Below, one piece after another: positions 941 to 64,000 of a stretch of DNA of 64,000 nucleotides; within the stretch, counting starts at the first letter, position 1, and the number at the start of each line of letters is the position of its first letter. Below the pieces are notes generated by a model. It did not search any database and was not told the origin of the DNA. It saw only the letters and a list, made by a program, of their open reading frames with translations. Location: positions 310,001 through 374,000 of the forward strand of contig NIVC01000978.1 of assembly GCA_002269645.1 (NCBI GenBank), written 5' to 3'. The stretch comes from Macrostomum lignano. Taxonomy: Eukaryota. The position numbers and the translations under genes are program-made.

Positions 941-971
<31 letters not shown>

Positions 972-9437: not shown

Positions 9438-9506
<69 letters not shown>

Positions 9507-23465: not shown

Positions 23466-23487
23466 CAGCAATCCGACCCGCTCAAGC

Positions 23488-42884: not shown

Positions 42885-43590
42885 CTGGCGCTGGCGCTCG
42901 GTGCTGGCGCCCCTTGATGCTGGCGCCCCTTGGTGCTGGCGCCCCTTGGTGCTGGCGCCCCTTGGTGCTAAAGCCCCTTGGTGCTGGCGCCCCTTGGTGC
43001 TAAAGCCCCTTGGTGCTAAAGCCCCTTGGTGCTGGCGCCCCTTGGTGCTAAAGCCCCTTGGTGCTAAAGCCCCTTGGTGCTGGCGCCCCTTGGTGCTGGC
43101 GCCCCTTGGTGCTAAAGCCCCTTGGTGCTGGCGCCCCTTGGTGCTAAAGCCCCTTGGTGCTAAAGCCCCTTGGTGCTAAAGCCCCTTGGTGCTAAAGCCC
43201 CTTGGTGCTAAAGCCTCTTGGTGCTAAAGCCCCTTGGTGCTAAAGCCCCTTGGTGCTAAAGCCCCTTGGTGCTAAAGCCCCTTGGTGCTAAAGCCCCTTG
43301 GTGCTAAAGCCCCTTGGTGCTAAAGCCCCTTGGTGCTAAAGCCCCTTGGTGCTAAAGCCCCTTGGTGCTAAAGCCCCTTGGTGCTAAAGCCCCTTGGTGC
43401 TAAAGCCCCTTGGTGCTAAAGCCCCTTGGTGCTAAAGCCCCTTGGTGCTAAAGCCCCTTGGTACTAAAGCCCCTTGGTACTAAAGCCCCTTGGTACTAAA
43501 GCCCCTTGGTACTAAAGCCCCAATTGGTACTAAAGCCCCGTAATTGGTGCTAAAGCCCCTTGGTGCTGGCGTCCCCCTTGTGCCTGGCGC
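42885..43590. repeat. 17-bp minisatellite switching from the GGC variant to the AAA variant
   Basis: CTTGGTGCTGGCGCCCC changes to CTTGGTGCTAAAGCCCC and then to GTACTAAAG. Confidence 0.96.
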
Positions 43591-43686: not shown

Positions 43687-46355
43687 TGTTGTGTATTGCA
43701 AAGGCATGCAATGCGTAGGGATAGTTCGGGGACAGGGTTTCTAGAAACTTCCACAGCAGGACTTGTTTACGCATTGTTCGAGAAGTTTCCTCCCCCGGTC
43801 TTTCTAGAACTTTCCTTCCCCACATGCATAAATATACGAGCCGCCCTCCTATTGGCCAAGCCCTCTTTTGGTGCCACTGAGCGCCCGGATAATTATCTAT
43901 CTTGTTTCTGCGTTCGTTAATTCAACAACAGAACATTGGCGACGAGGATGGCGGCTAGCATCCCCGCACCCACGCCCTTCCTGGCGAACTGCGGATCACC
44001 GACAGTACCATGGAGCCGATGGATTGAGGCCTTTGAATTTTATTACGAGGCGGCCCAATTCAAGGAGCCCGAAGGGAAGGAAGAGGCGAAACCGCTGAAG
44101 AAGAGCCTTCTGCTCCATCTGCTTGGATTCGAAGGTCAGCGGGTTGCTCGAGCACGCCAAGCAATCAAGGAGAACGACACGTTCGCAGCAACTAAGGCGG
44201 AGCTCGAGAAGATCTTCGGCGAGAAGCCCAACGTGATAGTAGCCAGATATCGCTTCCGCCAGCGCCAGCAGCTACCCGGCGAGGACGTCAAGACCTTCGT
44301 GGCAGCCCTGAGGGAGCTGACGGAGCTGTGCAACTACGGCGCGATACAGGACGATCTCATCAGAGACCAGCTGGCTGAGAAGACCAGTAACCCCAGAATC
44401 CGAGAGAGGCTGCTGACGGAGAAGGTGGAGGACCTCAACCTGGCGAAAGCACTCAGCATCGCGGTCTCCATCGAGGAAGCCTCCAAAGAAGCCAAGGCGA
44501 TGGCGCCATCAACCTCGAGCACGGCAGCCGTCCAATCGATCCGACAGCCGAGGGGCCAGAAGGTCGCTGCAAAGGGGAGGCACCGCCCAGCACCAGCTGG
44601 CAGGACGGCCAAACCCGGCGGCGCCTGCACGCGCTGTGGGCGAGACCACGGACCGACGACCCACTGTCCGGCCAAGGGCAAGACATGCGAGGCCTGTGGC
44701 AAGAAGAACCACTTCCGGAGTTGCTGTCGCAGCCAGCAGGCTGCTGTCAATGCCGCGGACGAGGTGATCACAGTCTACGCAGTGCCGGGTGGCGACAGGG
44801 AGGTCCGGGCGACGCTGGAACTCGGACCGGACAGGACCGCTGTCAGCCTGATGGTGGACTGCGGCGCAAGGGTGTCGCTGCTGTCCCGACAGACCGCCGA
44901 CCGGATCTCAGGTGCAGTCACCTCTCCCACTACGACGAAGCTGCGTGCCTACGGCGGACTGCCGATCCAGCTAAGTGGTGTCACCGAGCTGGAGGTGCGC
45001 TACGGCGACAAGGCGATGCAGCACCGGTTCTTCGTTGCGCCAGGCGGCGACAACATCGTCGGTAGAGACCTGATGGAGAAGCTGGGCTTCCGAGTCGACC
45101 TTAGCGGGCAGCCGCTCAGAATCGCGAAAGTCAGCGACTTGACGGCGGACTTGCAGGCGCGGTACCCAACGACCTTCAGCGGTGCGATAGGATGCTGCGC
45201 CGGCGCTGTACACCAGCCCAAGGTCGACCCAGCAGTGCGACCCGTCCAGCAGCCACTCCGCCGCCTGCCCCTCATGCGACAGGAGCAGGTCGGTGCCGAA
45301 CTCGACAAGATGGAGAAGGACGGCATCATCGAGCGAGTTCTCGGACTTCCTGGCCGAGCAGGGCATCCGGCACGTCAAGACCAGCCTCTACCATCCGCAG
45401 ACCAACGGCCAGACGGAGCGTCTCAATCGGTCGCTGCTCGCCAGCATCAGAGCGGCCATGGCGGAGAACAGGCCGTTTCAAGACGCCGTGACCAACTTCT
45501 TGTCTGCCTACCGGAGCTCCAAGCACAGCCTGACGGGCAAGTCACCGGCCGAGCTCATGCTGGGTCGGAAGTGGCGCACCGCGATCACCATGCTGTCTCC
45601 CGGAGGGGGAATGACAACGACCGAGGCGACGCCTCAGGCACTGCGGCAGCAAATCGAGGCGCGGCAGCAGCAGATCAAGGCCTACACCGATGCCAGACGA
45701 AGGGCCCGCCCCGAGACGTTCCACCCCGGCGAGTGGGTGAAAATCCGACGGCCCACCAAGAAGGGCAAACTGGGTACCCGCCTCTCACAGCCACTAGAAG
45801 TGCTCCGCCAGGCGGGACACCACGCGTTCGAGCTCAGCGACGGCACCAGGTGGAACCAGCAGCGGCTGACCCGAACGCCGCACCCGGCACAGCCGAGAGA
45901 GCGGTTCGACCCACTGGTGGACTCGGCGCCAACGACCGGAGCCGGCACGGCGGCACCGGCGGCACCGGCGGCGGAGCCTCCGGCAAGAACAGCAGCGCCC
46001 CGCCGATCTGAGCGAGCCAGGCACCCGCCGATACGCTACATGAACTGCCGCTGGGACCGATCAAAGTGAAGCTTGGGGACTTTTGGACTCCTTGAAGGAG
46101 GGGAAGAATGTTGTGTATTGCAAAGGCATGCAATGCGTAGGGATAGTTCGGGGACAGGGTTTCTAGAAACTTCCACAGCAGGACTTGTTTACGCATTGTT
46201 CGAGAAGTTTCCTCCCCCGGTCTTTCTAGAACTCCTTCCCCGCGTGCATAAATATACTAGCCGCCCTCCTATTGGCCAAGCCCTCTTTTGGTGCCACTGA
46301 GCGCCCGGATAATTATCTATCTTGTTTCTGCGTTCGTTAATTCAACAACAGAACA
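43687..46355 (+). mobile_element. Internally deleted Ty3/Gypsy LTR retrotransposon (2669 bp)
   Basis: LTRs 43687-43935 and 46109-46355 (TG...CA); TSD ATTAC; PBS TGGCGACGAGGATGG 43937-43951 (complementary to the tRNA-Ser(GCU) 3' end); PPT GAAGGAGGGGAAGAA; gag with two CCHC-like knuckles, protease MVDCGA, RT start, integrase C-terminal half. Confidence 0.96.
43948..46011 (+). CDS. Gag-protease-truncated RT fusion ORF of the Gypsy element
   Basis: LLLHLLGFEG, YRFRQRQQLPGEDV, IRDQL, CEACGKKNHFRSCC, PVQQPLRRLP; reads out of frame after ~45338. Confidence 0.85.
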   Translation: MAASIPAPTPFLANCGSPTVPWSRWIEAFEFYYEAAQFKEPEGKEEAKPLKKSLLLHLLGFEGQRVARARQAIKENDTFAATKAELEKIFGEKPNVIVARYRFRQRQQLPGEDVKTFVAALRELTELCNYGAIQDDLIRDQLAEKTSNPRIRERLLTEKVEDLNLAKALSIAVSIEEASKEAKAMAPSTSSTAAVQSIRQPRGQKVAAKGRHRPAPAGRTAKPGGACTRCGRDHGPTTHCPAKGKTCEACGKKNHFRSCCRSQQAAVNAADEVITVYAVPGGDREVRATLELGPDRTAVSLMVDCGARVSLLSRQTADRISGAVTSPTTTKLRAYGGLPIQLSGVTELEVRYGDKAMQHRFFVAPGGDNIVGRDLMEKLGFRVDLSGQPLRIAKVSDLTADLQARYPTTFSGAIGCCAGAVHQPKVDPAVRPVQQPLRRLPLMRQEQVGAELDKMEKDGIIERVLGLPGRAGHPARQDQPLPSADQRPDGASQSVAARQHQSGHGGEQAVSRRRDQLLVCLPELQAQPDGQVTGRAHAGSEVAHRDHHAVSRRGNDNDRGDASGTAAANRGAAAADQGLHRCQTKGPPRDVPPRRVGENPTAHQEGQTGYPPLTATRSAPPGGTPRVRAQRRHQVEPAAADPNAAPGTAERAVRPTGGLGANDRSRHGGTGGTGGGASGKNSSAPPI

Positions 46356-48902: not shown

Positions 48903-51900
48903 ATGTCATTTTTTATTATTTCTTTCTTTGTCTTGGTTGCAATGTGTGTTGGGTTATATTTTTATTCAAGAAAGAGTGGGACTAAAATTGAAGGCAGCAG
49001 TGATCCAGGATTTGTATACTTTAGAAATCTCTACTTGGTTGTTTATCTTCTTGGAATGGGTAAGTGTACTTATTTTATTTTTTATTATATAGCCTAGCTA
49101 GGACCTATTCTGACCATTTAATAGTTCACTATTGACTTGACCTAGGCCTAAGCCAGAGCCATCCTGGCTAATTTGATTATATAAAAGATCTTTTAATCCC
49201 CTATATTATACACCACACTTATAGACACGGCCGCCATGTCTATTTAAGTTTCTGCATTAGATATAGCCACCATGTCTAAGTATGAATATAGACCTAGTCA
49301 CTATTAGAGACATGGCCGCCGTGTCAATGAAACTTGCATGGCAGCCGTGTCATTAATATTGAATGGGTTCACACTTAGAGACATGGTGGGTGGCTGTATA
49401 ATTGCTGATATACATGTAAGCACATTAAATTCAACTTTAATTATTACAATATGGCATAATTCCATTGTTACTAATAGCCTTTTTTATTATAATATAAAAT
49501 ATAACCAATACTTATCAATAGTATATTTATAATGACTTTTTGATATATAGTAAGCTCTATAAGGTTCCTGATAGAAGAAACAAATTAATTTAAAATGGTT
49601 CTTTGACATGGCTACCCTAGAAGACATTGACATTGATGTATTGATTCTTAATAGATCTTATTTATCTTCTTAGGTTGCTCCACAAGTACTTGCAAGAATG
49701 TGCAAGTTTGACTTACAGATATAGCTACATATATAATTGTGGCTGCACTTTAAGATTTAGTGTTACTCTTATTAAAAATTTAATTTAATTTAATTGTAAT
49801 ATTTTATTTTAATTAAAAAACTTTAAAAGTTTAGGATGCAAAAATTTCTGTTTACTAAAAAAATTTCAAATAAAAAAACTGAGTACTTGAGATTTAAACC
49901 TTGCTATATGCAATCACAAGGCAATTGAGACATATCTACTAAGCTATCATTTGCTTATAAGAGAGCCTTATAGAACATGCATTTTATATCAATGATTATA
50001 GCCATGCCTATAAGCTCCAATATTATAGGCACGGCTACTGTGCCATGCTTATAAACTCTAATATTATAGATACAGCTGCCGTGCCATGCCTATAAACTCC
50101 AATATTAGAGACACGGCCGCCATGCCATGCCTATAAGCTCTAATATTATAGACATGGCTGCCATGCCTATAAGCTCCAATATTATAGACACGGCTGCCAT
50201 GCCTATAAGCTCCAATATTATAGACACGGCTGCCATGCCTATAAGCTCCAATATTATAGACACGGCTGCCGTGCCTATAAGCTCCAATATTATAGACATG
50301 GCTGCCATGTCATGCCTATAAGCTCCAATATTATAGACAGGGCTGCCATGCCATGCCTATAAGCTCCAATATTATAGACACGGCTGCCATGCCTATAAGC
50401 TCCAATATTATAGACATGGCTGCCATGCCCTTAAGCTCCAATATTATAAACACGGCTGTCGTGCCTATAAGCTCCAATATTATAGACACGGCTGCCATGC
50501 TGTGCCTATAAGCTCCAATATTATAGACAAGGCTGCCATTGAAACGAAAAATTATATGGCTTTTTCCCATATTATCGTTTCCTTCTGCCAACAGTTCAGG
50601 AAGACAACGAACAATGGACCTCGATGGTAACTTTCTCTGTGTGATCTCTAGAGTCACATTCTCAAACTTCAGGCGAGGATCTTTCCTCTTCAATCAGTAT
50701 ATTTTATAAGCTAGCACACTGTACGCAAGCAACGAGGAATAGGAGCAGTAGGGGGAGAGAGTGGGATTTCAAGGCCCAATAGGCAGTGTCGGTCAGAGGT
50801 TGTGCATGCATCACGCGAGGGTCGCATGGCTGGGCTTCTTGCTCGCCGATCATCAGGACTATTTTTAGGCATGCAGATCTTGTGCATCTGGGGAGTTGCT
50901 GCCAAGGCTGGATGCTTGTTCACGCATCACGCGCGTGTCGGCTGATTTCTCCCATCCTCTTGCTATCGGCGCCTTCGTTTCACTTCAGTCGCTCTTTTTT
51001 CAGGGAAGCGAGGCCCTCCAAGCTCTGTTGAAAATAAGCTTGGAGCAATGATGACATGGCGTACAGTTGTGCATTTGCTTGCGATACGCAGTCCTACTTG
51101 GTAACTTGCAATTGAGTTGATGTTGTTGAAACACGAAACTTGGTCAAGGGGCAAAGTGAACTTGTGACAACAGTGGATGAATTGTACCAGCATATCCTCT
51201 TGACTATTTAATCAGATCTGAGAGGGGGTTGACGTGAACTCGGAAACTCGACAAATTGAATGGGCTTTTCGATGCCCTAAACAGTGACGCAAATAGGACT
51301 GGACACGGAGACTCGACAAATTGAAACAGCGTCTGGTAGACAGTCAGATCGGGATGCTGGCTGAAGGTACATTGCAGTTAAATAGGACGTCGAAAAATAC
51401 CGTCTTGACCAAATTGATTGTGTAGATCTCTCAACGAGAGTTTCTTCTTGGAAGGGTAAACTGCGTCGCTTCTTGATCTTCGTCCATTGGTCTTGTTTAG
51501 TTCGAAGTTTTCCTTTACTGAAGGCAGGAAAGTCTCAGTTCTCGATTCATTCGAATGGCTGTTGAAGACATGCAGCAGAGCGATAACTGCATGGGGTATC
51601 TGAGACTTCTGTCTAGCGGCGACTCACGCAGTCAGTGGAACCAATTGAAACGAAAAATTATATGGCTTTTTCCCATATTATCGTTTCCTTCTGCCAACAG
51701 TTCAGGAAGACAACGAACAATGGACCTCAATGGTAACTTTCTCTGTGTGATCTCTAGAGTCACATTCTCAAACTTCAGGTGAGGATCTTTCCTCTTCAAT
51801 CAGTATATTTTATAAGCTAGCACACTGTACGCAAGCAACGAGGAATAGGAGCAGTAGGGGGAGAGAGTGGGATTTCAAGGCCCAATAGGCAGTGTCGGTC

Positions 51901-54900
51901 AGAGGTTGTGCATGCATCACGTGAGGGTCGCATGGCTGGGCTTCTTGCTCGCCGATCATCAGGACTATTTTTAGGCATGCAGATCTTGTGCATCTGGGGA
52001 GTTGCTGCCAAGGCTGGATGCTTGTTCACGCATCACGCGCGTGTCGGCTGATTTCTCCCATCCTCTTGCTATCGGCGCCTTCGTTTCACTTCAATTTTAA
52101 TAAATTGCCTAAATTATCTCTTATTCATGGTTAACAGTGATTTTGTCTAATTTTTTATTTGCCTTTTGTTTTGCCATCTTTTTGTTACACTAATTTTTAT
52201 AGTAGGTTATTTTGTTTGCCAATTTGGTTATTTTGGTTGCTATTAGTTTGAGTCTCAATTGGACTTTTCCAAATTGTAATAAAATGTATACAATAATATA
52301 TGCTTAGGCACAACCTAGGGATTCAGCTGGCCATTTCTATTGGCAATACACATAAGTCACTATTGGACAGAATAATAGTCACATGACTGCTTTCAGCCAA
52401 TAGTGATTTACATGTGTGTTGCCAATGGAAATGGCCAAGTGATTCCCAAGGTTGTGCATGTAAATATAAGGGGTATCCCAAAAGTTCTTGGAATGTCTGA
52501 TGTAGCTCTTCAATGGAGCCGGGAAATTTCCTGCCCATGGTGTCAAATTAAAGGAAATTTTGTCACAAAGAAAACAAAGTTAAAATCATGTTGATAATAT
52601 TGATATCTTTTTTTATTTAGGAGCTGCAGCAAAAAAACATGTGCAAAGGTCAGGGGTAGTGTTACACAATCTCAAAAATCTATGGCAATGATTTTAAACA
52701 ATAAACACAGAACAGTTCATACCATTGATGAATCCTTGGGGCATGCACCAATTAAAAATTCAAAGCAAATCATCAAGCTCAACCTGTGGCTTCTCTATGT
52801 AGTCCCCATTCAGTTGGACACACCTCTGCCACCTTGAAAGCATGCTGTTGATGGCCTGGCCAAAAACAGTTTCAATCTGTTGATAGGATGTCTCGCCACC
52901 CAACGTGCAAGAATGGCCAGAGCGTGGCTGATAATTCATAGCAGACTGGCCATCTCTAAAGTGTTCGATCCATCTATAAATGGCAGCTTTTTCAGGCTGT
53001 TCTTGATGAGAGATTAGACATTTTAACTTTGTTTTCTTTGTGACAAGATTTATTTTCATTTGACACCATGGGCATGAAATTTCACGGCTCCATTGAAGAG
53101 CTATATTAGACATTCCGGAAACTTTTGGGACAACCCTCGTAATAGTAAAATGTGCTATGCAAAAATTGTAAATATAACTCTATAGTATATAATTTAGTAG
53201 ATTCTTAGTTTTGTGCTTTGCAATATTATTTATTAATCTAGATATTGATCTAACAGGGATTTTGTTATTCTAGAAGCCCCATCATGAAAAGTATTATCCC
53301 ATTTAGATTAGTATTGCAATGGGATGGTTGATTTTAGGTCTTAGGGCATTATTTTTAAATAGATTTTAGTAGATGTTGATCTAAGGGGGTGTACTAGAAA
53401 AGTAGGATGCATTTTTTGTCCCAAAAATTTGCAGAGAATTTGCACCAGAAGCCTCTGTCTTTACAAGCATGCTTTTTTCCTAAAAAAATTGCAGAAAGAA
53501 TTTGCACCAGAAGCCCTATCTTGACAACTACTATGTAGCTAAGCCTAAAAGACAAAAGGCAGTTTAATCAGAAAAAAAGAAACAAGCAAACAAAAAGAAA
53601 AACATAATAATAAAACAAAAAAACAAGCTAAAAATTAACCAATTATAATCCAAAGCTGGCTAATCTAGCTAGCTAGTGAAAAGCAAAAAGTTGCAAAAGT
53701 TGCAAAAATGCACACCTGAAAGAGTATAAACTTTACTACTAGTTACTAATTAGATGATGAGGCATTTAGCCTCAATATAGATATAGTTGCTTTTGCCATC
53801 ATTATTATTGCTAGCATATGATAAAATATATTTTTTCTATTTGTTTAATTTATAAAGAGCTTCAGGTAATGGTCTATTATAATTATTATTTTATTTTACA
53901 GATAATTCATTAGAACAAAAATATTTTTATCTATTCTAGTCTTGGGCCCAAGCAACTAATAATATATAATTGTTAATATGGCCCATTTATTTAACTCCCA
54001 ACTCTTATTTGCTATGATTTAATTTTATGAAAAATACTACTAAAATCATAATGCCATTTGGCACCTGGAGCCAAAAAAAGCAGGATGCTACCCTAATCAC
54101 TTAAGAGTTAAATTTAAGAATTTTTCCATACCCTTTTACATTGCTAAAATAAACTCATAGCAGTATAACATAAAGCTAAAGTAAATGATAATTGTTATAT
54201 AAAATGCTTCATCTTCACACCCAATTATGTTAGCTGGCGACTGGCTGCAAGGCCCCTATGTGTACGCCCTGTATGAGCACTACAAGCTGTCCAAGCGGGA
54301 TATTGAGTTCCTATTCGTTGCCGGATTCGGAGCCAGCATGCTGTTTGGCACTGTTGTCGGCTCTTTTTCCGATAAATTTGGTCGCCAACGTAACTGCATT
54401 CTGTATGGCATTATCTACAGCTTGTCCTGTCTGACTAAGCACTCCAGCAATTTCTGGGTACTGTTGCTAGGCAGGTTGCTAGGCGGCACAGCTACTAGTA
54501 TACTGTGGAGTGGCTTTGAAACCTGGCTGATACACGAGCATCATAGTAGAGGCTACAGCGATAGGCTACTAGAAGAGATTTTTAGTTGGGCCACTATCGG
54601 CAATAGCATCGTAGCCATTGTGTGCGGCGTTGCTGCCCAATACGCTGTAGACCTATTCGGCTATGTTGCTCCATTCGATATGGCTCTGATCATTCTAGTC
54701 ATTATGACCGTCATTGTTTGGCTAAAATGGCCGGAAAACTACGGCGATGCCAGTGCAGATTTGAAGAAGAACTTCTCTGACGCTTTGACAACTGTGCGCA
54801 CTGATAGGAGAGTCTTGTGTCTGGGCGTTGTACAGTCCCTGTTCGAGGGCAGCATGTACTGCTTTGTACTGGAATGGACTCCGGCGCTGACTCCGTCTGC

Positions 54901-57900
54901 TGCCTGTGAGATATTCTCACCCCTATTGGAATAAGTGTTAAAAACCCGCGGACGCGCGCTTTAGAAAAGAGTCAAACTATTTTACCGCGCTTTAGGATTA
55001 TTAGAGATGTTCCGAAAGATCTGCAGTTCTTTCGGAAATTTTGAAATCAAAATTCGCTAACTTTCCAAAATCAAAATTGAAATTTCCCGAAATCATAATT
55101 CAGAAAAACAAAGTTTAAAATGATCAACACTCACTTTTTTACTTTCAATTTACTGCTTAAGCAAAAAGTAATACATGTATATGTAGTAGAAAGTAGTTTA
55201 TTTTTAGCAACTTTTTAGACACTACCAAAATTTTCACTTCTAAATTATTTCGAAATTGAAATTCGCTCTAAAAAATTTCAAATTTTGGAAAATTGAAATT
55301 GAATTTTTGGAACATCTCTAAGCTTAATAAATTACGAGTGTATAAGCCCCTTCAACAGAGGTATTATACCCATTTCCATGTATATGTATTTGCTAGAGCA
55401 GCAGCCAGTAAGAAAGGGCAGCGCACGCAGGCGCTGCGCCTGTGCGCGCGCTGCGCTTTAGAAAAATTTCAAAAGTGCGCTGGACACCGTCCGCGGTTTT
55501 ACAACTTTTTCCTATAGGGATTCTCACTTCTTTGGGGGGGTGGAATTTCCCAAAATACTGAGATAATTTGCGTACTTAATATTGTATTTGGTTAAATGTC
55601 AGTGGAATAAACATACCAGCTTGCCTCTTCGGTGATCATTGGGTGGTGACGTCATTCCTATTACACTTTCTGTCGCGTAATATAACTATAACTTCCTCAT
55701 CATTGGTCTTTTTCGTCCTACCATCCGTTTTTCACAATTTGCTTTCCATCATGCGCTCAAACTGATCAGAGTCTAATCTTTTTAATATCTGTCCCTCAAA
55801 TAACTTTTCCATATCCTGTTCTTTCCCAGTTCCCTTTCCTCTCTCTCCTGACCTAACCTCCCTCTCACCCTCTCCCCCCCCCTTTGTCTCTCCATCTCCC
55901 TTTCCCTCTCTCACTCTCCCTCTCACTCTCCCTCTCTCTCTCCTTCCCTCCTCTCTTTCTGTCTGCCTCTCTCTCCTTCCCTTCCCTCTCTATCTCCCAC
56001 TTTTCTCTCCCTCTCCCTCTTAACCTCTCCGTCATTTCTACGTCTTCGTCAATGCACAGCTCTCATACTGTGACTGTCCCGCCCTACCCAGCCACCATGA
56101 GCAGCGGTCACGCGGGCAAAATCCCGCACGGCTACATCTTCGCGGCCTACATGGTTAGCCTGATGATTGGCGGCCAGTTGTTCTCGTTCTGCTGCAACCG
56201 GTCCAAGCCGGAGTCCTTCATGCGCTGGGTGTTTGGCCTGAGCTCAGTCTGTCTGGTTCAGCCAGCCCTGATGCGCAGTGATTCGCTGATCCCAATCACC
56301 TTTGTTGGCTTCCTTGTGTTCGAGTGCTGCGTTGGACTGTTCTGGCCGGCTATTGGCACTATGAGGAGCAAATATGTGCCGGATTCCAGTGAGTTTGGGC
56401 TTTGGATAAAGACTTGATTGATTAAAACACATAGATTGTCTAAACTATGTTAAGATTTGTGGTCAGACAAAGACCTGAAATGTGTGTCTTATGAGATCAT
56501 CTGAATGGACAAAGACCTGGAATTTCTGTTGAGTTATCTGAGATCATCTGAATTGACAAAGACCTGGAATTTCTGTTGAGTTATCAGAGATTATCTGAAT
56601 GGACAAAGACCTGGAATGTTTGTTGAGTCATCAGAAATCATCTGAATGGACAAAGACCTGGAATGTCTGTTGAATCATCAGAGATCATCTGAATGGACAA
56701 AGACCTGGAATGTCTGTTGAGTTATCAGAGATCATCTGAATGGACAAAGACCTGATATGTCTGTTGAGTGATCAGAGATCATCTGAATGGACAAAGACCT
56801 GAAATGTCTGTTGATTGATCAGAGATCATCTGAATGGACAAAGACCTGATATGTCTGTTGATTGATCAGAGATCATCTGAATGGACAAAGACCTGGAATT
56901 TCTGTTTGGATTATCAGAGATCATTTGAATGGACAAAGACCTGGAATGTCTGTTGAGTTAGTAATGAGGTAATCGTACCGCACAACCCGCAGTTCGCGCC
57001 ACCATCATGAACCTGTTCCGTATCCCGCTCAACCTGGTTGTGGTGATTATTCTAACTCAGAATTTTCCAATCGTGTTCATCTTCAAGTGCTGCGTATTTT
57101 TCCTGATCATCTGCTGCGGCATTCAGTTCTACTTGGAACGGTGAGCCGAGTTCGCGTTTAGTATTGCTTTTGTCAGCCTAACTGAGAATAAAGCCACCCA
57201 AAATGAGAATCCTGCCTACGCTGACTGCGAAGGGCCTGGCTGCGTGCAGCCTTAGTCTATGGGCCATAGACAATAAAGGACAAGCAAAGTGATAAAAAGC
57301 CATCCAGTGTGAGAATCGATTGGTCTATGCGTCGTATTCTTTTATTTTTATACCTTCTGAGCTTCTGAGCCATATGACTAGCCAATCCTAGCTTATCCTT
57401 TATAGTCTATGGCTCATAGACTAGGCTGGACCCAGCTAGGCCCTTCGTATTCAGCGTAGGCAGGATTCTCACATTGAATGGTTTTTTATCACTTTGCTTA
57501 TCCTTTATAGTCTATGGCCCATAGACTAAGGCTGCACGCAGCCAGGCCCTTCGCAGTCAGCGTAGGCAGGATTCTCACTTTGGATGGCTTTATTCTCAGT
57601 TAGGCTGACAAAACCAATACTGATGCCAATGAGTTCAGTGGGCTATAATCTCTGTTTACATGAGTTCTGCTAAGTAGCTTTGCGCGTCTGGGCCTTAAGC
57701 CTAACAAAATCCATTAGGACTAAGGCATGTTTTTTTCTCGTGGGCAAACACACTCTGCACTATTGAAATGGATAACAGCTGTGCAAAATGCATTTCCTGC
57801 TTTTCGCAAAATTGGCATTCGTTAAGTAGCATTTAGAATTGACTTAATCTGTCTATTTTATGGCTAGGAAACTCAATAAACTTCTAATCTCTCTGAATCT

Positions 57901-59720
57901 CAATCGGTAGTTTCAGAATCTCAATCGGTAGTTTCTGAATCTCAATCGGTAGTTTCTGAATCTCAATCGGTAGTTTCTGAATCTCAATCGGTAGTTTCTG
58001 AATCTAAATCGGTAGTTTCTGAATCTCAATCGGTAGTTTCTGAATCTCAATCGGTAGTTTCTGAATCTCAATCGGCAGCTTCTGAATCTCAATCGGTAGT
58101 TTCTGAATCTCAATCGGTAGTTTCTGAATCTCAATCGGTAGTTTCTGAATCTCAATCGGTAGTTTCTGAATCTCAATCGGCAGCTTCTGAATCTCAATCG
58201 GTAGTTTCTGAATCTCAATCGGTAGTTTCTGAATCACAATCGGTAGTTTCTTAATCACGATCGGTAGTTTCTAAATCACAATCGGTAGTTTCTAAATCAC
58301 AATCGGTAGTTTCAGAATCTCAATCGGTAGTTTCTGAATCTCAATCGGTAGTTTCTGAATCTCAATCGGCAGCTTCTGAATCTCAATCGGTAGTTTCTGA
58401 ATCTCAATCGGTAGTTTCTGAATCACAATCGGTAGTTTCTGAATCTCAATCGGTAGTTTCTGAATCTCAATCGGTAGTTTCTGAATCTCAATCGGTAGTT
58501 TCTGAATCTCAATCGGTAGTTTCTGAATCTCAATCGGTAGTTTCAGAATCTCAATCGGTAGTTTCAGAATCTCAATCGGTAGTTTTTGAATCTCAATCGG
58601 TAGTTTCTGAATCTCAATCGGTAGTTTCTGAATCTCAATCGGTAGTTTCTGAATCTCAATCGGCAGCTTTTGAATCTCAATCGGTAGTTTCTGAATCTCA
58701 ATCGGTAGTTTCTGAATCACAATCGGTAGTTTCTTAATCACGATCGGTAGTTTCTAAATCACAATCGGTAGTTTCTAAATCACAATCGGTAGTTTCAGAA
58801 TCTCAATCGGTAGTTTCTGAATCTAAATCGGTATAGTTTCTGAATCTCAATCGGTAGTTTCTGAATCACAATCGGTAGTTTCTGAATCTAAATCGGTAGT
58901 TTCTGAATCTCAATCGGTAGTTTCAGAATCTCAATCGGTAGTTTCTGAATCACAATCGGTAGTTTCTGAATCTAAATCGGTAGTTTCAGAATCTCAATCG
59001 GTAGTTTCTGAATCTAAATCGGTAGTTTCAGAATCTCAATCGGTAGCTTCTGAATCTCAATCGGTAGTTTCTGAATCTCAATCGGTAGTTTCTGAATCTA
59101 AATCGGTAGTTTCTGAATCTCAATCGGCAGCTTCTGAATCTCAATCGGTAGTTTCTGAATCTCAATCGGCAGCTTCTGAATCTCAATCGGTAGTTTCTGA
59201 ATCTCAATCGGCAGCTTCTGAATCTCAATCGGTAGTTTCTGAATCTCAATCGGTAGTTTCTGAATCACAATCAGTAGTTTCTTAATCACGATCGGTAGTT
59301 TCTAAATCACAATCGGTAGTTTCTGAATCACAATCGGTAGTTTCTGAATCACAATCGGTAGTTTCTGAATCACAATCGGTAGTTTCTGAATCACAATCAG
59401 TAGTTTCTGAATCACAATCGGTAGTTTCTGAATCAAAATCAGTAGTTTCTGAATCACAATCGGTAGTTTCTAAATCACAATCGGTAGTTTCTGAATCTCA
59501 ATCGGTAGTTTCTGAATCACAATCAGTAGTTTCTGAATCACAATCGGTAGTTTCTGAATCAAAATCATTAGTTTCTGAATCTCAGCCAGTCTTGAGTGCA
59601 TTTCAAATAAATTTGTTTTCCAGGCTCACTCGTGATGAAGCCCCGGTGGAGTCTGCAGATAGTCAGACGGGAGCGAAGTCTACGGAAAATGACCAAGGAG
59701 AGTTTCAGGGCATCGCCTGA
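48903..59720 (+). CDS. MFSD5: Molybdate-anion transporter MFSD5 (MFS); exons 48903-49058, 54234-54905, 56092-56388, 56993-57140, 59624-59720
   Basis: YLLGM|AGDWLQGPYVYALY, LFVAGFGASMLFG, GRLLGGTATSILWSGFETW, QSLFEGSMYCFVLEWTP, IPHGYIFAAYM, IRATIMNLFRIPLN; phases 1/1/1/2 are consistent. The exon 1 end lies within 1 nt of the stated position. Confidence 0.9.
50000..50539. repeat. 36-bp minisatellite (41-bp variants) in MFSD5 intron 1
   Basis: ATAGACACGGCTGCCATGCCTATAAGCTCCAATATT. Confidence 0.93.
50540..52093 (-). mobile_element. TRIM-like non-coding LTR element (448-bp LTRs, 658-bp interior)
   Basis: Direct repeats 50540-50987 and 51646-52093 with TG...CA ends and 3 mismatches; on the minus strand a TGG-initiated PBS-like TGGTTCCACTGAC follows one LTR and purine-rich AAAAAAGAGCGAC precedes the other. 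No TSD found. Confidence 0.75.
52467..53139 (-). mobile_element. Internally deleted mariner-type DNA transposon
   Basis: ~130-bp inverted ends flanked by TA; right end reads TA|CGAGGGTTGTCCCAAAAGT; remnant AIYRWIEHFRDG...PRSG fused to RWQRCVQLNGDYIEK. Confidence 0.85.
56490..56958. repeat. 47-bp minisatellite, ~10 copies, in MFSD5 intron 3
   Basis: TCTGAATGG at 56641 and 56688. Confidence 0.94.
57160..57621. mobile_element. Foldback/MITE-like element with ~158-bp inverted arms, MFSD5 intron 4
   Basis: Arms 57160-57317 and 57464-57621 are near-perfect reverse complements; internal GTCTATGG(G/C)CCATAGAC palindromes. Confidence 0.8.
57890..59582. repeat. 21-bp minisatellite TTTCTGAATCTCAATCGGTAG, ~80 copies, MFSD5 intron 4
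   Basis: 7-aa periodic spurious ORFs (IEIQKLP). Confidence 0.97.
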
Positions 59721-60579
59721 ATCCGAGATAAGGTTTTCAAGAACGATTTTTAGGCCTATGCTCTTTTTCTGTTGGCTAGCTGTCCTATATGATTTCTAAA
59801 ATTTTCTTCGGTTTTTAAAAGAAATCTTTTGCTTGAGTTTTTATTGTTATTAAATAAACGTTTGCTTCTACCTGAAGAATGGGACTTTATTAAGACAGAC
59901 AAATAGACAGACAGACAGACAGACAGACAGATGGAGTGATTGTCTGACAGTTATAAACTGAATAACCAATATTTATTATTATATTTTATCATCAGTGCCT
60001 GTTATATATTCTACTATAAATAGCACAGTGTGATAATTATGACATTCCATTACGTCTGTTTTTGTTAAAGTACCATTTTTCAATAATCTGTCTATCAATA
60101 GTACGTAACTTATTTTATTTTTTATTCAAAAAATCACCACGTTCCTGGTTAGCTACTGACAAGTATGCGGAAAGTAGTATAATATGTAAATTAGCTGAAT
60201 GGGTGATAGCTAATATTTGAAATTAGCGCTGATATAATCGGAATTGGCTTACCCTATACACACACTATACTCGCTGTCATTTCATCATTTCATCTGTTTA
60301 GCTAGATTTTGTAGTTTCACGTTCTTAATAGTATGTAAAAATGCACGCGTGCTGTTTATTGATGCGTGTGCGTACTTTACTTTTCTATTGTTTCATTTTT
60401 TAACGAACTATCAAAACGTTGTTGGAGTTTTTACGGTTTTTTTGTCTAAGTTTGTTTTTGCTGCTCTTAGTAATGCCTTAATAAAATCGTTCTGTTTTCT
60501 GAAAAATTGACTCTTGAGATACTTTAACCTTTTAATTTCAAGTCCAGAATCACCTTTCAGCTAATACTCAGAAGTGTAG

Positions 60580-60724
60580 CCTACCCCATAGAATCTCCCC
60601 TGATACCCAACAGCCTGCCCCATAGAATCTCCCCTGATACCCAACAGCCTGCCCCATAGAATCTCCCCTGATACCCAACAGCCTGCCCCATAGAATCTCC
60701 CCTGATACCCAACAGCCTGCCCCA
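60580..60724. repeat. 34-bp tandem repeat, ~4 copies
   Basis: GCCTGCCCCATAGAATCTCCCCTGATACCCAACA at 60613, 60647 and onward. Confidence 0.93.
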
Positions 60725-60850
60725 AATCGATAAATCGATAGCAACATCAGTTGAAGCTTTGCCAACCCTCATTGCAGCGCAGTTGCAGACCGCTCGCCAC
60801 GCTACATATGTACTGGGACATAAAAGGCCACTTACCTATCTAAATACGCA

Positions 60851-62311
60851 ATGCACGTGTCTACAGAGAAAGGCTCTCGCAGACGAATTTTTAACACTGA
60901 TGAAGATTCACCAGATGCTGCACTGCAATCCTTGCCGGCCAGCGCAGTTACAATGTGTGTAAAAGAAAACTGCTACTATTATCCGCTTGGTTGCACTCTT
61001 AATTGCGTCGAGAATAATCGCTACGAGTTCAAGGGACATTGCTCGCTTACCTGGGCGAAAATCACCGGCGATGCTTCTGTTGTAAAAACGCCTCACAATG
61101 ACGACTTGCCAAACACAGTTTTAAATCCCAAGTACACAGGTAAAAAGCCAATCAGTCGCAGTCTGTGCGCAATGGCAAATTCGCCAGATGGCGGGGTTGT
61201 TCTCTGCGGCGTCACCGACAGCGGTCGGGTTGGCGGGTTGCCTTTCTCCGAACCCGAGAAGGAGCACGTGATGCTGGCGCTTAATAAATTGTTTAGCGAA
61301 TTCCGACCGCCAGTTGGTCCGGAACGGTATCGGGTGCACTTTGTGCCCGTTCTGGCCCCGGGCGAGGTCGACGAGTACATTAGTTGTCACGCTCCTCCAG
61401 ACTTAGAATCTTCAGCGAGTCCTGTTGTTGAAGCTTCTAAATCTGACCAAGTTGACCAGTCTAGCTTGTTTGGCTCTTTGTCAAACAATAATGGCCCTAA
61501 CGATGGTTTAAGCAGCTCATCGCCAGTTAAAACTTGGATGGATTCCCCATTTTCAAGCGAGCATCAGACCGCTTCAGACAGTTTACTGTCAAAGCCTTTG
61601 CTAACTCTTGCAAAGAATGCCTCATCGGATTCAATGCTTAATTACAAATCTGACAGTCAAAGCGATTTAATGAATCAGCCTCTGATGTCTGATCTTGATT
61701 CTGAGTTAAAGACTCCGTTGCCAACCAAAGAGAACAAAGACTCCGAGTTGCCACCAACCAAAGAAGCAAACAAAAATTCCGAGGAGTCGTCTTTGTCGGA
61801 AACTCAGTCGGGTAGTAACGAGTCCAGGCCGCACCGGTTGCACGACTTTATGCACTGCTGGTGCTTCTTGCTTCGTGTGGACAGATATACCGACGGCGTG
61901 TCCACTAGAAGATACGTATTGCGAATTGAGATGCTGCCCCAGGTATTTACTACTATTTCTGTTGACCGTTATTTGGCTTTAAGCGACGATTATTCAACCG
62001 TAGACGACGAGGATAATGACGGCACTGATAAAGCTGATTGCAGCGATGCTGAGGATTCCATTGACTGTGAAGAAGAAGATGAGTTCTTATCTATGGAGCC
62101 GTTGTCAATTAAAATGCCGGTGTTTGTGTGCAACGAAGAGGGTCTTTGCCAGGTGCGCTGTCTTGGCGCCAACAGGTGCTTGTCTGCGCTGCAGGTGCAG
62201 CAGCTGGCCGAGGAGCGGGCTCTGTCCGCCCTGCAGGATGAGCTTGTTGAACTGCGTCGCGATGTCAGACAGTTGCGGCAGTTGCGCGATCAAGTATTCG
62301 GAGATACCTGA
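60851..62311 (+). CDS. Intronless Schlafen/AlbA_2-domain (SLFNL1-like) protein with a C-terminal coiled coil
   Basis: ENNRYEFK; LCAMANSPDGGVVLCGVTDSG; FRPPVGPERYRVHFVPV (cf. SLFNL1 FKPQIFPDAYTLTFIPV); terminal LQDELVELRRDVRQL; AATAAA near 62408. The start could be 60851 or 60953. Confidence 0.8.
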   Translation: MHVSTEKGSRRRIFNTDEDSPDAALQSLPASAVTMCVKENCYYYPLGCTLNCVENNRYEFKGHCSLTWAKITGDASVVKTPHNDDLPNTVLNPKYTGKKPISRSLCAMANSPDGGVVLCGVTDSGRVGGLPFSEPEKEHVMLALNKLFSEFRPPVGPERYRVHFVPVLAPGEVDEYISCHAPPDLESSASPVVEASKSDQVDQSSLFGSLSNNNGPNDGLSSSSPVKTWMDSPFSSEHQTASDSLLSKPLLTLAKNASSDSMLNYKSDSQSDLMNQPLMSDLDSELKTPLPTKENKDSELPPTKEANKNSEESSLSETQSGSNESRPHRLHDFMHCWCFLLRVDRYTDGVSTRRYVLRIEMLPQVFTTISVDRYLALSDDYSTVDDEDNDGTDKADCSDAEDSIDCEEEDEFLSMEPLSIKMPVFVCNEEGLCQVRCLGANRCLSALQVQQLAEERALSALQDELVELRRDVRQLRQLRDQVFGDT

Positions 62312-62537
62312 AAGCAAAGCTAATCCAGATTTCATTCTGCATGTATATTGCCAATCCTGCGTCGTGTTAATGACTTTCTCATTATTGGCTGGCATGAAAA
62401 TATTATATAATAAAATCTAGCACTTTGTGGAAATAGGAGTACTATACTCGTACTCGTATATTTCGTTGAGGTCAGTTAGACACTTCTCTAGAGGCAGCTG
62501 TTGGGCATCATTGTAAGGTGGATTGGGGCAGTTCGAC

Positions 62538-63695
62538 ATCACATGACTCTTGGAAGCAGTCAGACATGACTCTTGGAGGCAGTCAGACATGACTCTATGG
62601 AGGCAGTTAGACATGACTCTATGGAGGCAGTTAGACATGACTCTATGGAGGCAGTCAGACATGACTCTATGGAGGCAGTCAGACATCACTCTTGGAGGCA
62701 GTCAGACATGACTCTATGGAGGCAGTCAGACATGACTCTATGGAGGCAGTTAGACATGACTCTATGGAGGCAGTCAGACATGACTCTATGGAGGCAGTCA
62801 GACATCACTCTTGGAGGCAGTCAGACATCACTCTTGGAGGCAGTCAGACATGACTCTATGGAGGCAGTCAGACATCACTCTTGGAGGCAGTCAGACATGA
62901 CTCTATGGAGGCAGTCAGACATGACTCTATGGAGGCAGTTAGACATGACTCTATGGAGGCAGTTAGACATGACTCTATGGAGGCAGTCAGACATGACTCT
63001 ATGGAGGCAGTCAGACATGACTCTATGGAGGCAGTCAGACGTGACTCTTGGAGGCAGTTACACATGACTCTATGGAGGCAGTTACACATGACTCTTGGAG
63101 GCAGTTAGACATGACTCTTGGAGGTAGTTAGACATGACTCTAGGAGGGAGTTAGACATGACTCTAGGAGAGAGTTAGACATGACTCTAGGAGGGAGTTAG
63201 ACATGACTCTAGGAGGGAGTGAGACATGACTCTAGGAGGGAGTTAGACATGACTCTAGGAGGGAGTTAGACATGACTCTAGGAGGGAGTTAGACATGACT
63301 CTAGGAGGGAGTGAGACATGACTCTAGGAGGGAGTTAGACATGACTCTAGGAGGGAGTTAGACATGACTCTAGGAGGGAGTTAGACATGACTCTAGGAGG
63401 GAGTTAGACATGACTCTAGGAGGGAGTGAGACATGACTCTAGGAGGGAGTTAGACATGACTCTAGGAGGGAGTTAGACATGACTCTAGGAGGGAGTTAGA
63501 CATGACTCTAGGAGGGAGTGAGACATGACTCTAGGAGGGAGTTAGACATGACTCTAGGAGGGAGTGAGACATGACTCTAGGAGGGAGTTAGACATGACTC
63601 TAGGAGGGAGTTAGACATGACTCTAGGAGGGAGTTAGACATGACTCTAGGAGGGAGTTAGACATGACTCTAGGAGGGAGTTAGACATGGCTCTTG
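62538..63695. repeat. 23/24-bp minisatellite with a polarised change of unit
   Basis: GACATGACTCTATGGAGGCAGTCA (24 bp) changes to GACATGACTCTAGGAGGGAGTTA (23 bp) near 63130. Confidence 0.96.
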
Positions 63696-64000
63696 GAGGA
63701 CCTTAATATTCTCACTGTCTTCACTTTGTTTTGTTTTATTTTTGCACATCTTTTGTTTTAGTCTGTATGTTTTACGTCTTGCATGCTTACCTTTTTTACA
63801 ATAGCTTCATTGCTTCATATTGTTACGCTTTTATACGCTTGTTCAGTACTCACAAAAGTACATGTGCAGCCATTTTTGCATTGCATGTACATTTAGATGT
63901 ACTTTTATCGCCGTGTTTTACTTCTTAAACTTCCTAGAAATTCATACGACCGAATGAATGATGCCCCGCCCCCCTAAATCTTTGTTGTGCATTTTCAAAT

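What the first reader, a model, noticed from the sequence alone, without database searches (positions are those of the whole stretch)
60851..62311. Schlafen-like putative RNase with intact catalytic motif and a large acidic/Ser-rich insert
Seen: E-x4-E-F-K (codons at 61010, 61025, 61031) and G-V-T-D (61217), then an ~150-aa low-complexity insert splitting the domain, an acidic tract and a coiled coil; no introns, unlike all neighbouring conserved genes. Known: Schlafen RNases use E-x4-E-x-K plus a downstream Asp to cut tRNA/rRNA, and nematode Schlafen-like proteins (PUCH) process piRNA precursors. Inference: an uncharacterised RNA-cleaving defence or small-RNA factor, possibly a retrocopy.
Basis: partly seen in the sequence, partly recalled or inferred. 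Interest (0 to 1): 0.75.

Follow-up and report, generated by a model that had tools for sequence, protein, structure and literature searches.

The report
Divergent flatworm Schlafen-like (TOFU-2-like) nuclease gene
This is a real, intron-less gene of the flatworm Macrostomum lignano for a fast-evolving member of an animal-wide family of single-domain Schlafen-like proteins (the family of the worm piRNA nuclease subunit TOFU-2); it keeps the RNA-cutting residues but has two unusually large floppy inserts, and its substrate is unknown.

Summary
Window 60851-62311 (+) is an intact 486-aa ORF with E54-x4-E59-F-K61 and G-V-T-D123 at the stated codons. It has a 145-aa Ser/acid-rich disordered insert, an acidic loop and a C-terminal amphipathic helix.

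It passes Pfam SLFN_AlbA_2 (35 bits; cut-off 25.3). Its AlphaFold model matches only Schlafen N-domains and the SAMD9 tRNase in the PDB.

A scan of 1.84 billion proteins places it in a pan-metazoan family of about 200-340-aa single-Schlafen-domain proteins. NCBI names these 'tofu-2-like' or 'schlafen-like protein 2' (SLFL-2 = TOFU-2, catalytic subunit of C. elegans PUCH). E59 aligns with TOFU-2 E216, rat SLFN13 E210 and SAMD9 E196. D123 aligns with SLFN13 D248 and SAMD9 D241.

The inserts are record-size expansions of two loops that vary across the family. The protein is the second most divergent of 65 members and has lost four other conserved acidic residues.

A 97%-identical copy is already in GenBank (BOX15_Mlig006233g1, hypothetical protein). 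The two copies differ with dN/dS 0.23 and in-frame indels only.

No parent copy or retrocopy hallmark was found. Function and substrate are untested. Verdict: a divergent new member of a known kind, of modest interest.

The parts
60851..62311 (+). Single-exon ORF of 486 aa plus stop: Macrostomum lignano SLFL-2/TOFU-2-like Schlafen-domain protein
   Evidence: It is 97% identical to GenBank BOX15_Mlig006233g1. The locus is collinear with NIVC01004006.1.
60851..60952 (+). N-terminal extension, residues 1-34, predicted disordered; possibly not translated if Met35 (60953) is the true start
   Evidence: pLDDT is below 50. Relatives' N-termini align from about residue 37. A TATA-like CATAAAAGG lies about 25 nt before ATG 60851. 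Which start is used is unresolved.
60959..61390 (+). First half of the Schlafen/AlbA_2 domain (residues about 37-180)
   Evidence: Pfam PF04326 scores 35.2 bits over residues 98-164. phmmer hits cover residues 37-180. pLDDT is above 90 for 41-70 and 100-180.
61010..61039 (+). Catalytic-motif strand E54-NNRY-E59-F60-K61-G-H63
   Evidence: Family columns: E54 63/64, E59 63/64, F60, K61 and H63 64/64. The motif aligns to SLFN11 PESQSIEFK, SAMD9 HEFK (E196, K198) and TOFU-2 EEDVHNE216FRMH.
61208..61219 (+). G120-V-T-D123, the third acidic residue of the triad
   Evidence: D123 is Asp in 60/64 relatives. It aligns with rat SLFN13 D248 and SAMD9 D241 (PMC5862951; PMC10246899).
61391..61825 (+). Ser/acid-rich disordered insert, residues 181-325: an expansion of the family's variable linker
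   Evidence: pLDDT is below 50. The linker from F164 to H328 is 163 aa, against a median of 30 and a maximum of 96 in 64 relatives. There are no tandem DNA repeats. The frame is open, and the indel against the second copy is in frame.
61826..61933 (+). Family-specific His/Cys module and helix (H328, C336-W337-C338) followed by the YVLRI strand; probable structural metal site (inferred)
   Evidence: H328, C336, W337 and C338 are invariant in 64/64 relatives. The module is absent from SLFNL1 and SAMD9. pLDDT is 91-97.
61973..62104 (+). Acidic loop, residues 375-418 (19 D/E in 44): an expansion of the second variable loop
   Evidence: The loop from I359 to E429 is 69 aa, against a median of 27 and a maximum of 59. 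pLDDT is 53-68.
62105..62182 (+). Last beta-hairpin of the domain (PVFVCNEEGLCQVRCLG), with conserved E429 and R436
   Evidence: E429 is conserved in 52/64 and R436 in 54/64 relatives. Strands 432-437 and 440-444 have pLDDT above 90.
62186..62299 (+). C-terminal amphipathic helix, residues 446-483 (coiled-coil candidate); a family feature
   Evidence: Helix 446-483 has pLDDT above 90. The equivalent helix 219-237 appears in the Daphnia relative's model and in SLFNL1.
62409..62414 (+). AATAAA polyadenylation signal, 98 nt after the stop codon
60578..60724 (.). 34-bp tandem array bounding the gene upstream
62541..63699 (.). 23-bp tandem array (about 50 copies) bounding the gene downstream

Best explanation
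This is a functional, intron-less M. lignano gene. It encodes a fast-evolving member of the pan-metazoan single-Schlafen-domain family, to which NCBI's names tie C. elegans SLFL-2/TOFU-2. The folded core is one AlbA_2/Schlafen domain of about 230 residues. I infer that E54, E59 and D123 hold a divalent metal for endonucleolytic RNA cleavage, as in SLFN13, SLFN11, SAMD9 and TOFU-2. K61 would contact the RNA backbone, like SAMD9 K198. The invariant His/Cys module (H328, C336, C338, with H139 or H63) would form a structural metal site. The C-terminal amphipathic helix would mediate self-association. Two surface loops have grown into long acidic, Ser-rich disordered segments. I infer these are regulatory or localisation elements, not part of the catalytic machinery. 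Shown here: the gene, its family, the fold and the retained residues. Inferred: nuclease activity, metal binding and oligomerisation. The substrate is unknown. I lean towards tRNA or another structured RNA rather than PUCH-type capped piRNA precursors. Most characterised relatives cut tRNA, and PUCH's specificity needs partner SLFL subunits and a TOFU-2 SPRY domain, neither of which was seen here.
For: Gene reality:
- The ORF is intact in this window and in the 97%-identical copy on NIVC01004006.1.
- dN/dS is 0.23, and all indels (9 + 3 nt) are in frame.
- The ORF is 97.4% identical between copies, against 89.7% for the 3' flank.
- An AATAAA signal lies downstream.
- The deposited gene model comes from a genome annotation built on a genome-guided transcriptome (PMC5816591).

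Fold:
- Pfam SLFN_AlbA_2 scores above its gathering cut-off.
- The family profile hits SLFN11, SAMD9, SLFN13, SLFN12, SLFN14 and SLFN5 in the PDB.
- The top 14 Foldseek hits of the query model are all SLFN or SAMD9.
- The compact Daphnia relative's model (pLDDT 92) gives 32 top hits, all SLFN, SAMD9 or AlbA_2, with TM 0.50 to the SAMD9 tRNase.

Family:
- 198 hits were found, and the best named ones are 'tofu-2-like' or 'schlafen-like protein 2'.
- SLFL-2 is TOFU-2.
- All 10 invariant and 12 near-invariant family residues are present in the query.

Catalytic equivalences come, together with PMC5862951, PMC10246899 and PMC10567574.
Against: - No activity, transcript or localisation data were available for this copy.
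- The model's coordinates could not be read, so clustering of E54, E59 and D123 in three dimensions rests on alignment to solved relatives and not on measured distances.
- The protein has lost four acidic positions that most relatives keep: E/D53 to V, D55 to N (D in 51/64), D339 to F (D in 51/64) and E358 to R (E in 52/64).
- It is the second most divergent of 65 members, which fits relaxed or changed function.
- Full-length TOFU-2 could not be retrieved. The link to TOFU-2 rests on database names and a 17-residue stretch recovered from published primers.
Confidence: 0.6

Rival explanations
1. The protein has the Schlafen fold but is catalytically dead or strongly impaired. It would act as an RNA-binding or scaffolding subunit, as TOFU-1 and SLFL-3/4 do in PUCH, with the long disordered acidic or phospho-Ser segments recruiting partners or targeting granules.
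For: - Four well-conserved acidic positions are lost (53, 55, 339, 358), along with several other consensus residues: H58Y, R64C, L109A, G112P, Q136E, Y/F434Q.
- It sits on a long branch.
- Its loop expansions are the largest in the family.
- In PUCH, two of the three SLFL subunits lack catalytic residues (PMC10567574).
Against: - The three residues whose mutation kills SLFN13, and the equivalent of TOFU-2 E216, are all retained, as are K61 and H63.
- The N-terminal half carrying them shows only 1 non-synonymous against 3 synonymous differences between the two copies.
- D339 is also non-Asp in 13 of 64 relatives, so it is not essential to the family.
Confidence: 0.22
2. It is the flatworm counterpart of the PUCH catalytic subunit: a small-RNA (piRNA) precursor 5'-end processing nuclease acting in germline cells or neoblasts.
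For: - Its closest named relatives carry TOFU-2-derived names.
- The motif around TOFU-2 E216 matches the family motif, including the His that SLFNL1 and SAMD9 lack.
- M. lignano has an active PIWI/piRNA system in neoblasts and germline (general knowledge).
Against: - PUCH needs TOFU-1 and a transmembrane SLFL-3/4. It acts on nematode-specific capped 21U precursors of about 27 nt (PMC10567574).
- Only one family member was detected for M. lignano in the searches.
- Pfam finds no SPRY domain.
- The family is present in sponges, cnidarians, molluscs, crustaceans and amphioxus, which make piRNAs by the Zucchini/PIWI-slicing route (general knowledge).
- No expression data were found.
Confidence: 0.1
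3. It is a non-functional retrocopy or decaying pseudogene lying among satellite arrays.
For: - The gene is intron-less, while the Nematostella orthologue (275 aa over 3.5 kb) and the neighbouring genes have introns.
- It is flanked on both sides by tandem arrays.
- The insert has lower GC3 (0.42 against 0.53-0.58).
Against: - The 486-codon frame is open in both copies, indels are in frame only, and dN/dS is 0.23.
- All invariant family residues are kept.
- No parent paralogue, poly(A) tract or target-site duplication was found.
- The second copy has a transcriptome-derived gene model.
Confidence: 0.05

Closest known systems
C. elegans SLFL-2/TOFU-2 (catalytic subunit of PUCH) and its 'tofu-2-like' / 'schlafen-like protein 2' homologues in Daphnia, molluscs, termites, sponge, Saccoglossus and amphioxus
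   Same: - It has a single Schlafen/AlbA_2 domain.
- The motif E-[ED]-D-x2-x-E-F-[KR]-x-H contains the equivalent of the essential TOFU-2 E216 (query E59).
- It shares GV-x-D, the invariant H...C-W-C module, a C-terminal helix, and variable linkers at the same two positions.
   Different: - The query reads ENNRYEFKGH and CWCF instead of EED..HEFKGH and CWCD, and YVLRI instead of YVIEI.
- Its two loops are 163 and 69 aa, against medians of 30 and 27.
- It has no SPRY domain, which TOFU-2 has.
- No partner SLFL subunits were identified.
Vertebrate Schlafen RNases (SLFN11, 12, 13, 14; rat SLFN13 N-domain, PDB 5YD0)
   Same: - The three-carboxylate site E-x4-E...D is shared: E205/E210/D248 in rat SLFN13 correspond to E54/E59/D123.
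- The query has the same fold as the C-lobe.
- These structures are the top Foldseek and profile hits (PMC5862951).
   Different: - SLFNs have a pseudo-dimeric two-lobe core with a bridging domain and a CCCH zinc finger, and often a helicase domain.
- The query has one domain only.
- The query's His/Cys pattern is different (H...H-x7-C-x-C).
- Sequence identity is 12-23%.
SAMD9/SAMD9L tRNase SA (AlbA_2 effector domain, PDB 7KSP and 9O0D)
   Same: - Both have a single AlbA_2 domain.
- Both halves of the family profile align to it.
- It is the best structural match for the compact relative (TM 0.50).
- E196, K198 and D241 correspond to E59, K61 and D123, and the H139 equivalent is conserved (PMC10246899).
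   Different: - The SAMD9 site uses E184 (x11 spacing) and E218. The query has E-x4-E, and Pro100 sits at the E218 position.
- SAMD9 lacks the H...CWC module.
- In SAMD9 the domain is embedded in a protein of about 1,600 aa with SAM, P-loop NTPase and other domains.
SLFNL1 (vertebrate and cnidarian Schlafen-like protein 1)
   Same: - It is a single-domain Schlafen-like protein with E-x4-E-F-K, GV-x-D and a C-terminal helix.
- hhalign probability against the family profile is 98.8%.
   Different: - SLFNL1 lacks H63, H139 and H328 and the whole CWC module of about 40 aa.
- It has a long N-terminal region and often a CaaX-like C-terminus.
- It scores much lower against the query (E of 1e-5 to 1e-9, against 4e-22 for the Daphnia tofu-2-like protein).

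Membership tests
Schlafen / AlbA_2 fold (Pfam PF04326) | Significant match to the SLFN_AlbA_2 profile | tested here: met
   35.2 bits against a gathering score of 25.3, E = 2e-8, residues 98-164. The N-half alone scores 38.2 bits.
Schlafen / AlbA_2 fold (Pfam PF04326) | Predicted structure superposes on solved Schlafen/AlbA_2 domains | tested here: met
   Query model: the top 14 PDB hits are all SLFN13, 12, 11, 5 or SAMD9, probability 0.96-1.0, but E is only about 3e-3 because 40% of the chain is disordered. Relative P0002 model: the top 32 hits are all of this fold, E down to 3e-6, TM 0.50.
Schlafen-type nuclease active site | E-x4-E on the first strand plus a downstream Asp (rat SLFN13 E205/E210/D248) | tested here: met
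   E54, E59 and D123 are present and aligned.
SLFL-2/TOFU-2-like metazoan single-domain family | Best sequence relatives are members of this family | tested here: met
   The top hit is the Daphnia 'protein tofu-2-like' at 4e-22. Sponge, amphioxus and Saccoglossus 'schlafen-like protein 2' also hit. SLFL-2 = TOFU-2.
SLFL-2/TOFU-2-like metazoan single-domain family | Family-invariant residues F60, K61, H63, N110, G120, H139, H328 and C336-W337-C338 | tested here: met
   All are present in the query.
SLFL-2/TOFU-2-like metazoan single-domain family | Consensus acidic positions EED (53-55), CWCD (339) and YVIEI (358) | tested here: not met
   The query has V53, N55, F339 and R358. These positions are 78-81% conserved and not invariant, so this marks divergence and does not exclude membership.
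SLFL-2/TOFU-2-like metazoan single-domain family | Direct full-length alignment to C. elegans TOFU-2 | not tested
   The TOFU-2 sequence was not retrievable with the tools. Only the stretch FAVEEDVHN-E216-FRMHTKL was recovered from published primers, and it matches the family motif.
PUCH holoenzyme (C. elegans) | Trimer with TOFU-1 and a transmembrane SLFL-3/4; SPRY domain in TOFU-2 | tested here: inconclusive
   The query has no SPRY domain. No second M. lignano family member appeared in three searches, but those searches are not a complete scan of the M. lignano genome.
PUCH holoenzyme (C. elegans) | m7G-cap- and U3-dependent cleavage of piRNA precursors | not testable with these tools
   This needs biochemistry.
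Vertebrate SLFN groups I-III | Two-lobed pseudo-dimeric core with a bridging domain | tested here: not met
   The model has one AlbA_2 domain only. Profile alignments cover only the C-lobe region of SLFN11 and SLFN13.
SLFNL1 | Single domain without the H...CWC module | tested here: not met
   The query has the module. SLFNL1 sequences lack it.
SAMD9 tRNase SA | Four-carboxylate site E184/E196/E218/D241 | tested here: not met
   Only the E196 and D241 equivalents are present. Pro100 sits at the E218 position, and the first Glu has SLFN-type spacing (PMC10246899).
Processed retrocopy | An intron-bearing parent gene, a poly(A) remnant and flanking target-site duplication | tested here: not met
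   No parent paralogue was found. There is no A-tract after the 3' UTR and no flanking direct repeat. An old retrocopy that replaced its parent cannot be excluded.

The most novel reading that the evidence does not exclude
TOFU-2-like single-Schlafen-domain nucleases would be an ancestral metazoan RNA-processing or genome-defence activity, with PUCH as one nematode specialisation. The M. lignano copy would then be an active germline or neoblast nuclease whose giant acidic, Ser-rich loops are phospho-regulated modules. These modules would target it to germ or chromatoid granules, linking it to small-RNA or tRNA-fragment biogenesis in flatworm stem cells.
Probability: 0.12. Interest if true: 0.65.

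Novelty: new member of a known kind. Interest (0 to 1): 0.33.

Why it matters
Outside C. elegans, nobody has tested what the animal-wide TOFU-2-like Schlafen proteins do. They occur from sponges to amphioxus. They keep the residues that make SLFN11/13, SAMD9 and PUCH RNA-cutting enzymes. They also carry a family-specific His/Cys module that none of the solved relatives has. M. lignano is transgenic- and RNAi-tractable, and no second family member turned up in the searches run here. That would make it a practical organism for asking whether this family acts on tRNA, small-RNA precursors or something else. As it stands, the locus is a correct but unsurprising domain annotation of a divergent family member that is already in GenBank.

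Tried and rejected
- **phmmer of the protein against PDB sequences:** no hit. A family profile was needed.
- **NCBIfam and PADLOC:** nothing meaningful, so there is no specific tie to prokaryotic defence Schlafens.
- **Word-indexed homologue search with the query, and with an alignment containing it:** both returned only the M. lignano protein. The second was flooded by low-complexity words. A search with loop-free fragments gave 60 hits but no nematode TOFU-2 and no second M. lignano protein.
- **Exact-sequence look-up of the window's protein:** not on record. Only the 97% copy is.
- **tblastn of the protein against the window:** no paralogue here.
- **Insert as a retained intron or a DNA microsatellite expansion:** rejected. 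The frame stays open for 145 codons (chance about 2e-4 at this composition, my estimate). The indel against the second copy is in frame. TRF finds no tandem repeat in the ORF.
- **Retrocopy hallmarks:** none found.
- **Literature and supplement searches for Mlig006233, Schlafen or AlbA in M. lignano expression tables:** nothing found, and the held table is truncated, so this is inconclusive.
- **BFVD viral structure search:** one giant-virus AlbA_2 protein only.
- **Measuring distances between the acidic residues in the model:** not possible, because coordinates are not exposed.
Full report
**1. The observation**

Window 60851-62311 (+) is an uninterrupted ATG-to-TGA frame of 486 codons. An in-frame stop lies at 60821 and an AATAAA at 62409.
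- E54, E59 and K61 at 61010, 61025 and 61031, in VENNRYEFKGH.
- D123 at 61217, in GVTD.

Residues 181-325 are Ser-rich (35 of 145) and acidic. Residues 375-418 hold 19 Asp/Glu in 44. Residues 446-483 form one long amphipathic helix. No other ORF of weight lies on either strand. The window holds no paralogue.

**2. Organism and gene status**

The only close relative in 5.8 billion clustered proteins is Macrostomum lignano BOX15_Mlig006233g1. It is 482 aa, 97% identical, a 'hypothetical protein' that UniRef labels 'Schlafen AlbA-2 domain-containing'. Its contig NIVC01004006.1 is collinear with window 49759-64000 at 94-98% identity. The collinear stretch includes the upstream multi-exon MFS_5 transporter gene and the flanking minisatellites. 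The window is therefore a second haplotype, homeologue or assembly of the same locus.

Comparison of the two copies:
- The ORF is 97.4% identical. The unique 3' flank is 89.7% identical.
- The only indels (9 and 3 nt) keep the frame.
- NG86 dN/dS is 0.012/0.051 = 0.23.
- The N-terminal domain half has 3 synonymous and 1 non-synonymous differences.

The M. lignano annotation was built from a genome-guided transcriptome (PMC5816591). The deposited model therefore implies a transcript, but I found no expression table entry for it. I conclude it is a real gene under purifying selection. Direct transcript evidence for this copy is still missing.

**3. Fold**

- Pfam SLFN_AlbA_2 is the only family hit: 35.2 bits against a cut-off of 25.3. 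It aligns only residues 98-164, so the E-x4-E-F-K motif needed independent support.
- An exhaustive phmmer scan of 1.84 billion representatives gave 198 hits, 36 of them below 1e-10. Many align from residue about 37 to about 180, that is, through the motif.
- A 65-sequence alignment gave an AlphaFold model with 191 residues at pLDDT of 90 or more. These cover 41-70, 100-180, 325-365 and 420-483. The insert is below 50.
- Foldseek against the PDB returned only SLFN13, SLFN12, SLFN11, SLFN5 and SAMD9 tRNase in the first 14 places. Probabilities were 0.96-1.0, with weak E-values and TM scores because 40% of the chain is disordered.
- The compact Daphnia relative, modelled at pLDDT 92 and pTM 0.88, gave 32 consecutive hits of this fold. 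The best was the SAMD9 tRNase, at E = 3e-6 and TM 0.50.
- The family profile also finds SLFN11, SAMD9, SLFN13, SLFN12, SLFN14 and SLFN5 by sequence.

**4. Family**

The relatives are proteins of about 200-340 aa from these groups:
- Daphnia, gastropods, termites and locusts ('protein tofu-2-like')
- a dragonfly and a sea spider
- Nematostella
- the sponge Halichondria, Saccoglossus and amphioxus ('schlafen-like protein 2')

The PUCH paper defines SLFL-2 as TOFU-2 (PMC10567574), so both database names point to the same Swiss-Prot relative.

The family consensus, in order along the chain, is:
- EEDxxHEFKGH
- iSr.lCgFLNTG.GGt.YlGV.D.G.V.G..Lt.yQkDH
- PpV...y.v.FVPV
- a variable linker
- pH.LR...yCWCD
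- YViEI.I.pW
- a variable loop
- P.y.nEeG..y.R
- a C-terminal helix

In relatives the Pfam profile starts exactly at the first Glu and runs across the linker.

The E216A mutagenesis primers of the PUCH paper translate to FAVEEDVHN[E216]FRMHTKL. TOFU-2's essential Glu therefore sits in the same EED..xEF[K/R]xH motif and equals query E59.

Vertebrate SLFNL1 proteins are weaker hits. By hhalign they are homologous at 98.8% probability. They lack H63, H139, H328 and the whole H...CWC module of about 40 aa. SAMD9 lacks that module too.

**5. Residue equivalences**

From the HMM alignments and the cited papers:

| Query | Rat SLFN13 | SAMD9 | TOFU-2 |
|---|---|---|---|
| E54 | E205 | no equivalent | not recovered |
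| E59 | E210 | E196 | E216 |
| K61 | not assessed | K198 (tRNA binding) | not recovered |
| D123 | D248 | D241 | not recovered |

- SLFN13 E205A and E210A are inactive (PMC5862951).
- SAMD9 E196A and D241A abolish tRNA-Phe cleavage (PMC10246899).
- TOFU-2 E216A abolishes piRNA precursor cleavage (PMC10567574).

The query keeps every invariant and near-invariant family residue.

It also departs from consensus at several well-conserved places: E/D53V, D55N, H58Y, R64C, L109A, G112P, Q136E, D339F, E358R and Y/F434Q. It is the second most divergent of the 65 sequences. The 'intact catalytic motif' is therefore true for the SLFN-type triad. Loss of four other conserved carboxylates leaves real room for altered or reduced activity.

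**6. The inserts**

- The F164-to-H328 linker is 163 aa, against a family median of 30 and a maximum of 96.
- The I359-to-E429 loop is 69 aa, against a median of 27 and a maximum of 59.

Both are expansions of loops that vary throughout the family; a dragonfly protein also has a long Ser/Lys-rich linker. They contain no DNA tandem repeats. Between the two copies the linker insert shows 4 synonymous and 5 non-synonymous changes plus one in-frame indel, which fits weakly constrained coding sequence. Their function as regulatory or localisation elements is inference only.

**7. Introns and the retrocopy idea**

The ORF needs no intron. The Nematostella orthologue spans 3.5 kb for 275 aa. The neighbouring MFS_5 and prenyltransferase genes are split. 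No other M. lignano family member, poly(A) remnant or target-site duplication was found. Intron loss, or an old retrocopy that replaced its parent, remains possible. Nothing positively supports a retrocopy.

**8. Mechanism and rivals**

My best reading (0.6) is an active, metal-dependent endoribonuclease of the SLFL-2/TOFU-2-like family. It would probably self-associate through its C-terminal helix and carry a structural His/Cys metal site.

The substrate is unknown. I lean towards tRNA or another structured RNA, for three reasons:
- The SLFNs, SAMD9 and prokaryotic Schlafens cut tRNA.
- PUCH's specificity needs partners that were not seen here.
- PUCH acts on nematode-specific precursors.

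Rivals:
- a catalytically impaired RNA-binding or scaffold subunit (0.22)
- a PUCH-like piRNA processor (0.10)
- a dead retrocopy (0.05)

**9. Verdict**

The functional guess is plausible but untested, and the retrocopy suggestion is unsupported. The gene is a divergent new member of a known kind and is already present in GenBank under an uninformative name. Interest is modest. Its value lies in the whole TOFU-2-like family being uncharacterised outside nematodes, and in M. lignano being a tractable organism in which the searches run here found no second family member.

Noticed in passing
window 18524-20233, 23487-24130, 25829-26993, 28009-28441, 29662-30767, 39535-40319, 42909-43567, 56493-56960, 57892-59584, 60578-60724, 62541-63699: The window is crowded with long minisatellite arrays (periods 12-110 bp, up to about 100 copies). 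The 12-bp GAGAGAAGGGGA array at 25829-26993 explains the long overlapping ORFs on both strands there and the GC/AT-skew spike.
   Followed up: partly
window 29592-30737 (-): An ORF with a Pfam DUF6944 hit (70.9 bits) lies entirely on a 42-bp tandem array of 26 copies. The hit is probably a repeat artefact and not a gene.
   Followed up: partly
window 43936-46011 (+): A 691-aa ORF in a 64% GC stretch has a sub-threshold Asp_protease_2 match (22.4 bits against a cut-off of 24.3). It may be a retroelement gag-pol remnant.
   Followed up: no
window 60775-60787 and 60940-60952: A 13-nt element CAGCGCAGTT[G/A]CA occurs upstream of ATG 60851 and again directly before the second in-frame ATG (Met35, 60953). 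Family N-termini align from about Met35, residues 1-34 are predicted disordered, and a TATA-like CATAAAAGG lies only about 25 nt before the first ATG. The true start codon is therefore uncertain.
   Followed up: partly
window 49759-57800 (+): The upstream neighbour is a multi-exon MFS_5 (MFSD5-like) transporter gene. One exon, 54227-54934, covers profile positions 46-275 of 356. The gene is collinear with NIVC01004006.1.
   Followed up: partly
window 579-1679 (+), 9253-10896 (+), 20077-20763 (-): Other conserved coding pieces are a Myb-like DNA-binding domain, WD40 repeats, and the first half of a cis-prenyltransferase (DHDDS-like) domain, which implies further exons.
   Followed up: no
proteins P0058, P0076, P0125, P0126, P0132, P0140, P0142-P0144 (SLFNL1-type hits): Most SLFNL1-type proteins from fish, platypus and a jellyfish end in a CaaX-like C-[VIT]-[IV]-[LM] tetrapeptide. 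Several begin with an RRM-like FVGNLNP motif. This suggests prenylation and an RNA-binding N-domain in that sister family.
   Followed up: no
locus L002 3001-3990 (ENA metagenome contig ctg118570l): Another family member (P0033, 329 aa) is also encoded without introns and shares the query's CWCF variant. The organism is unknown.
   Followed up: no
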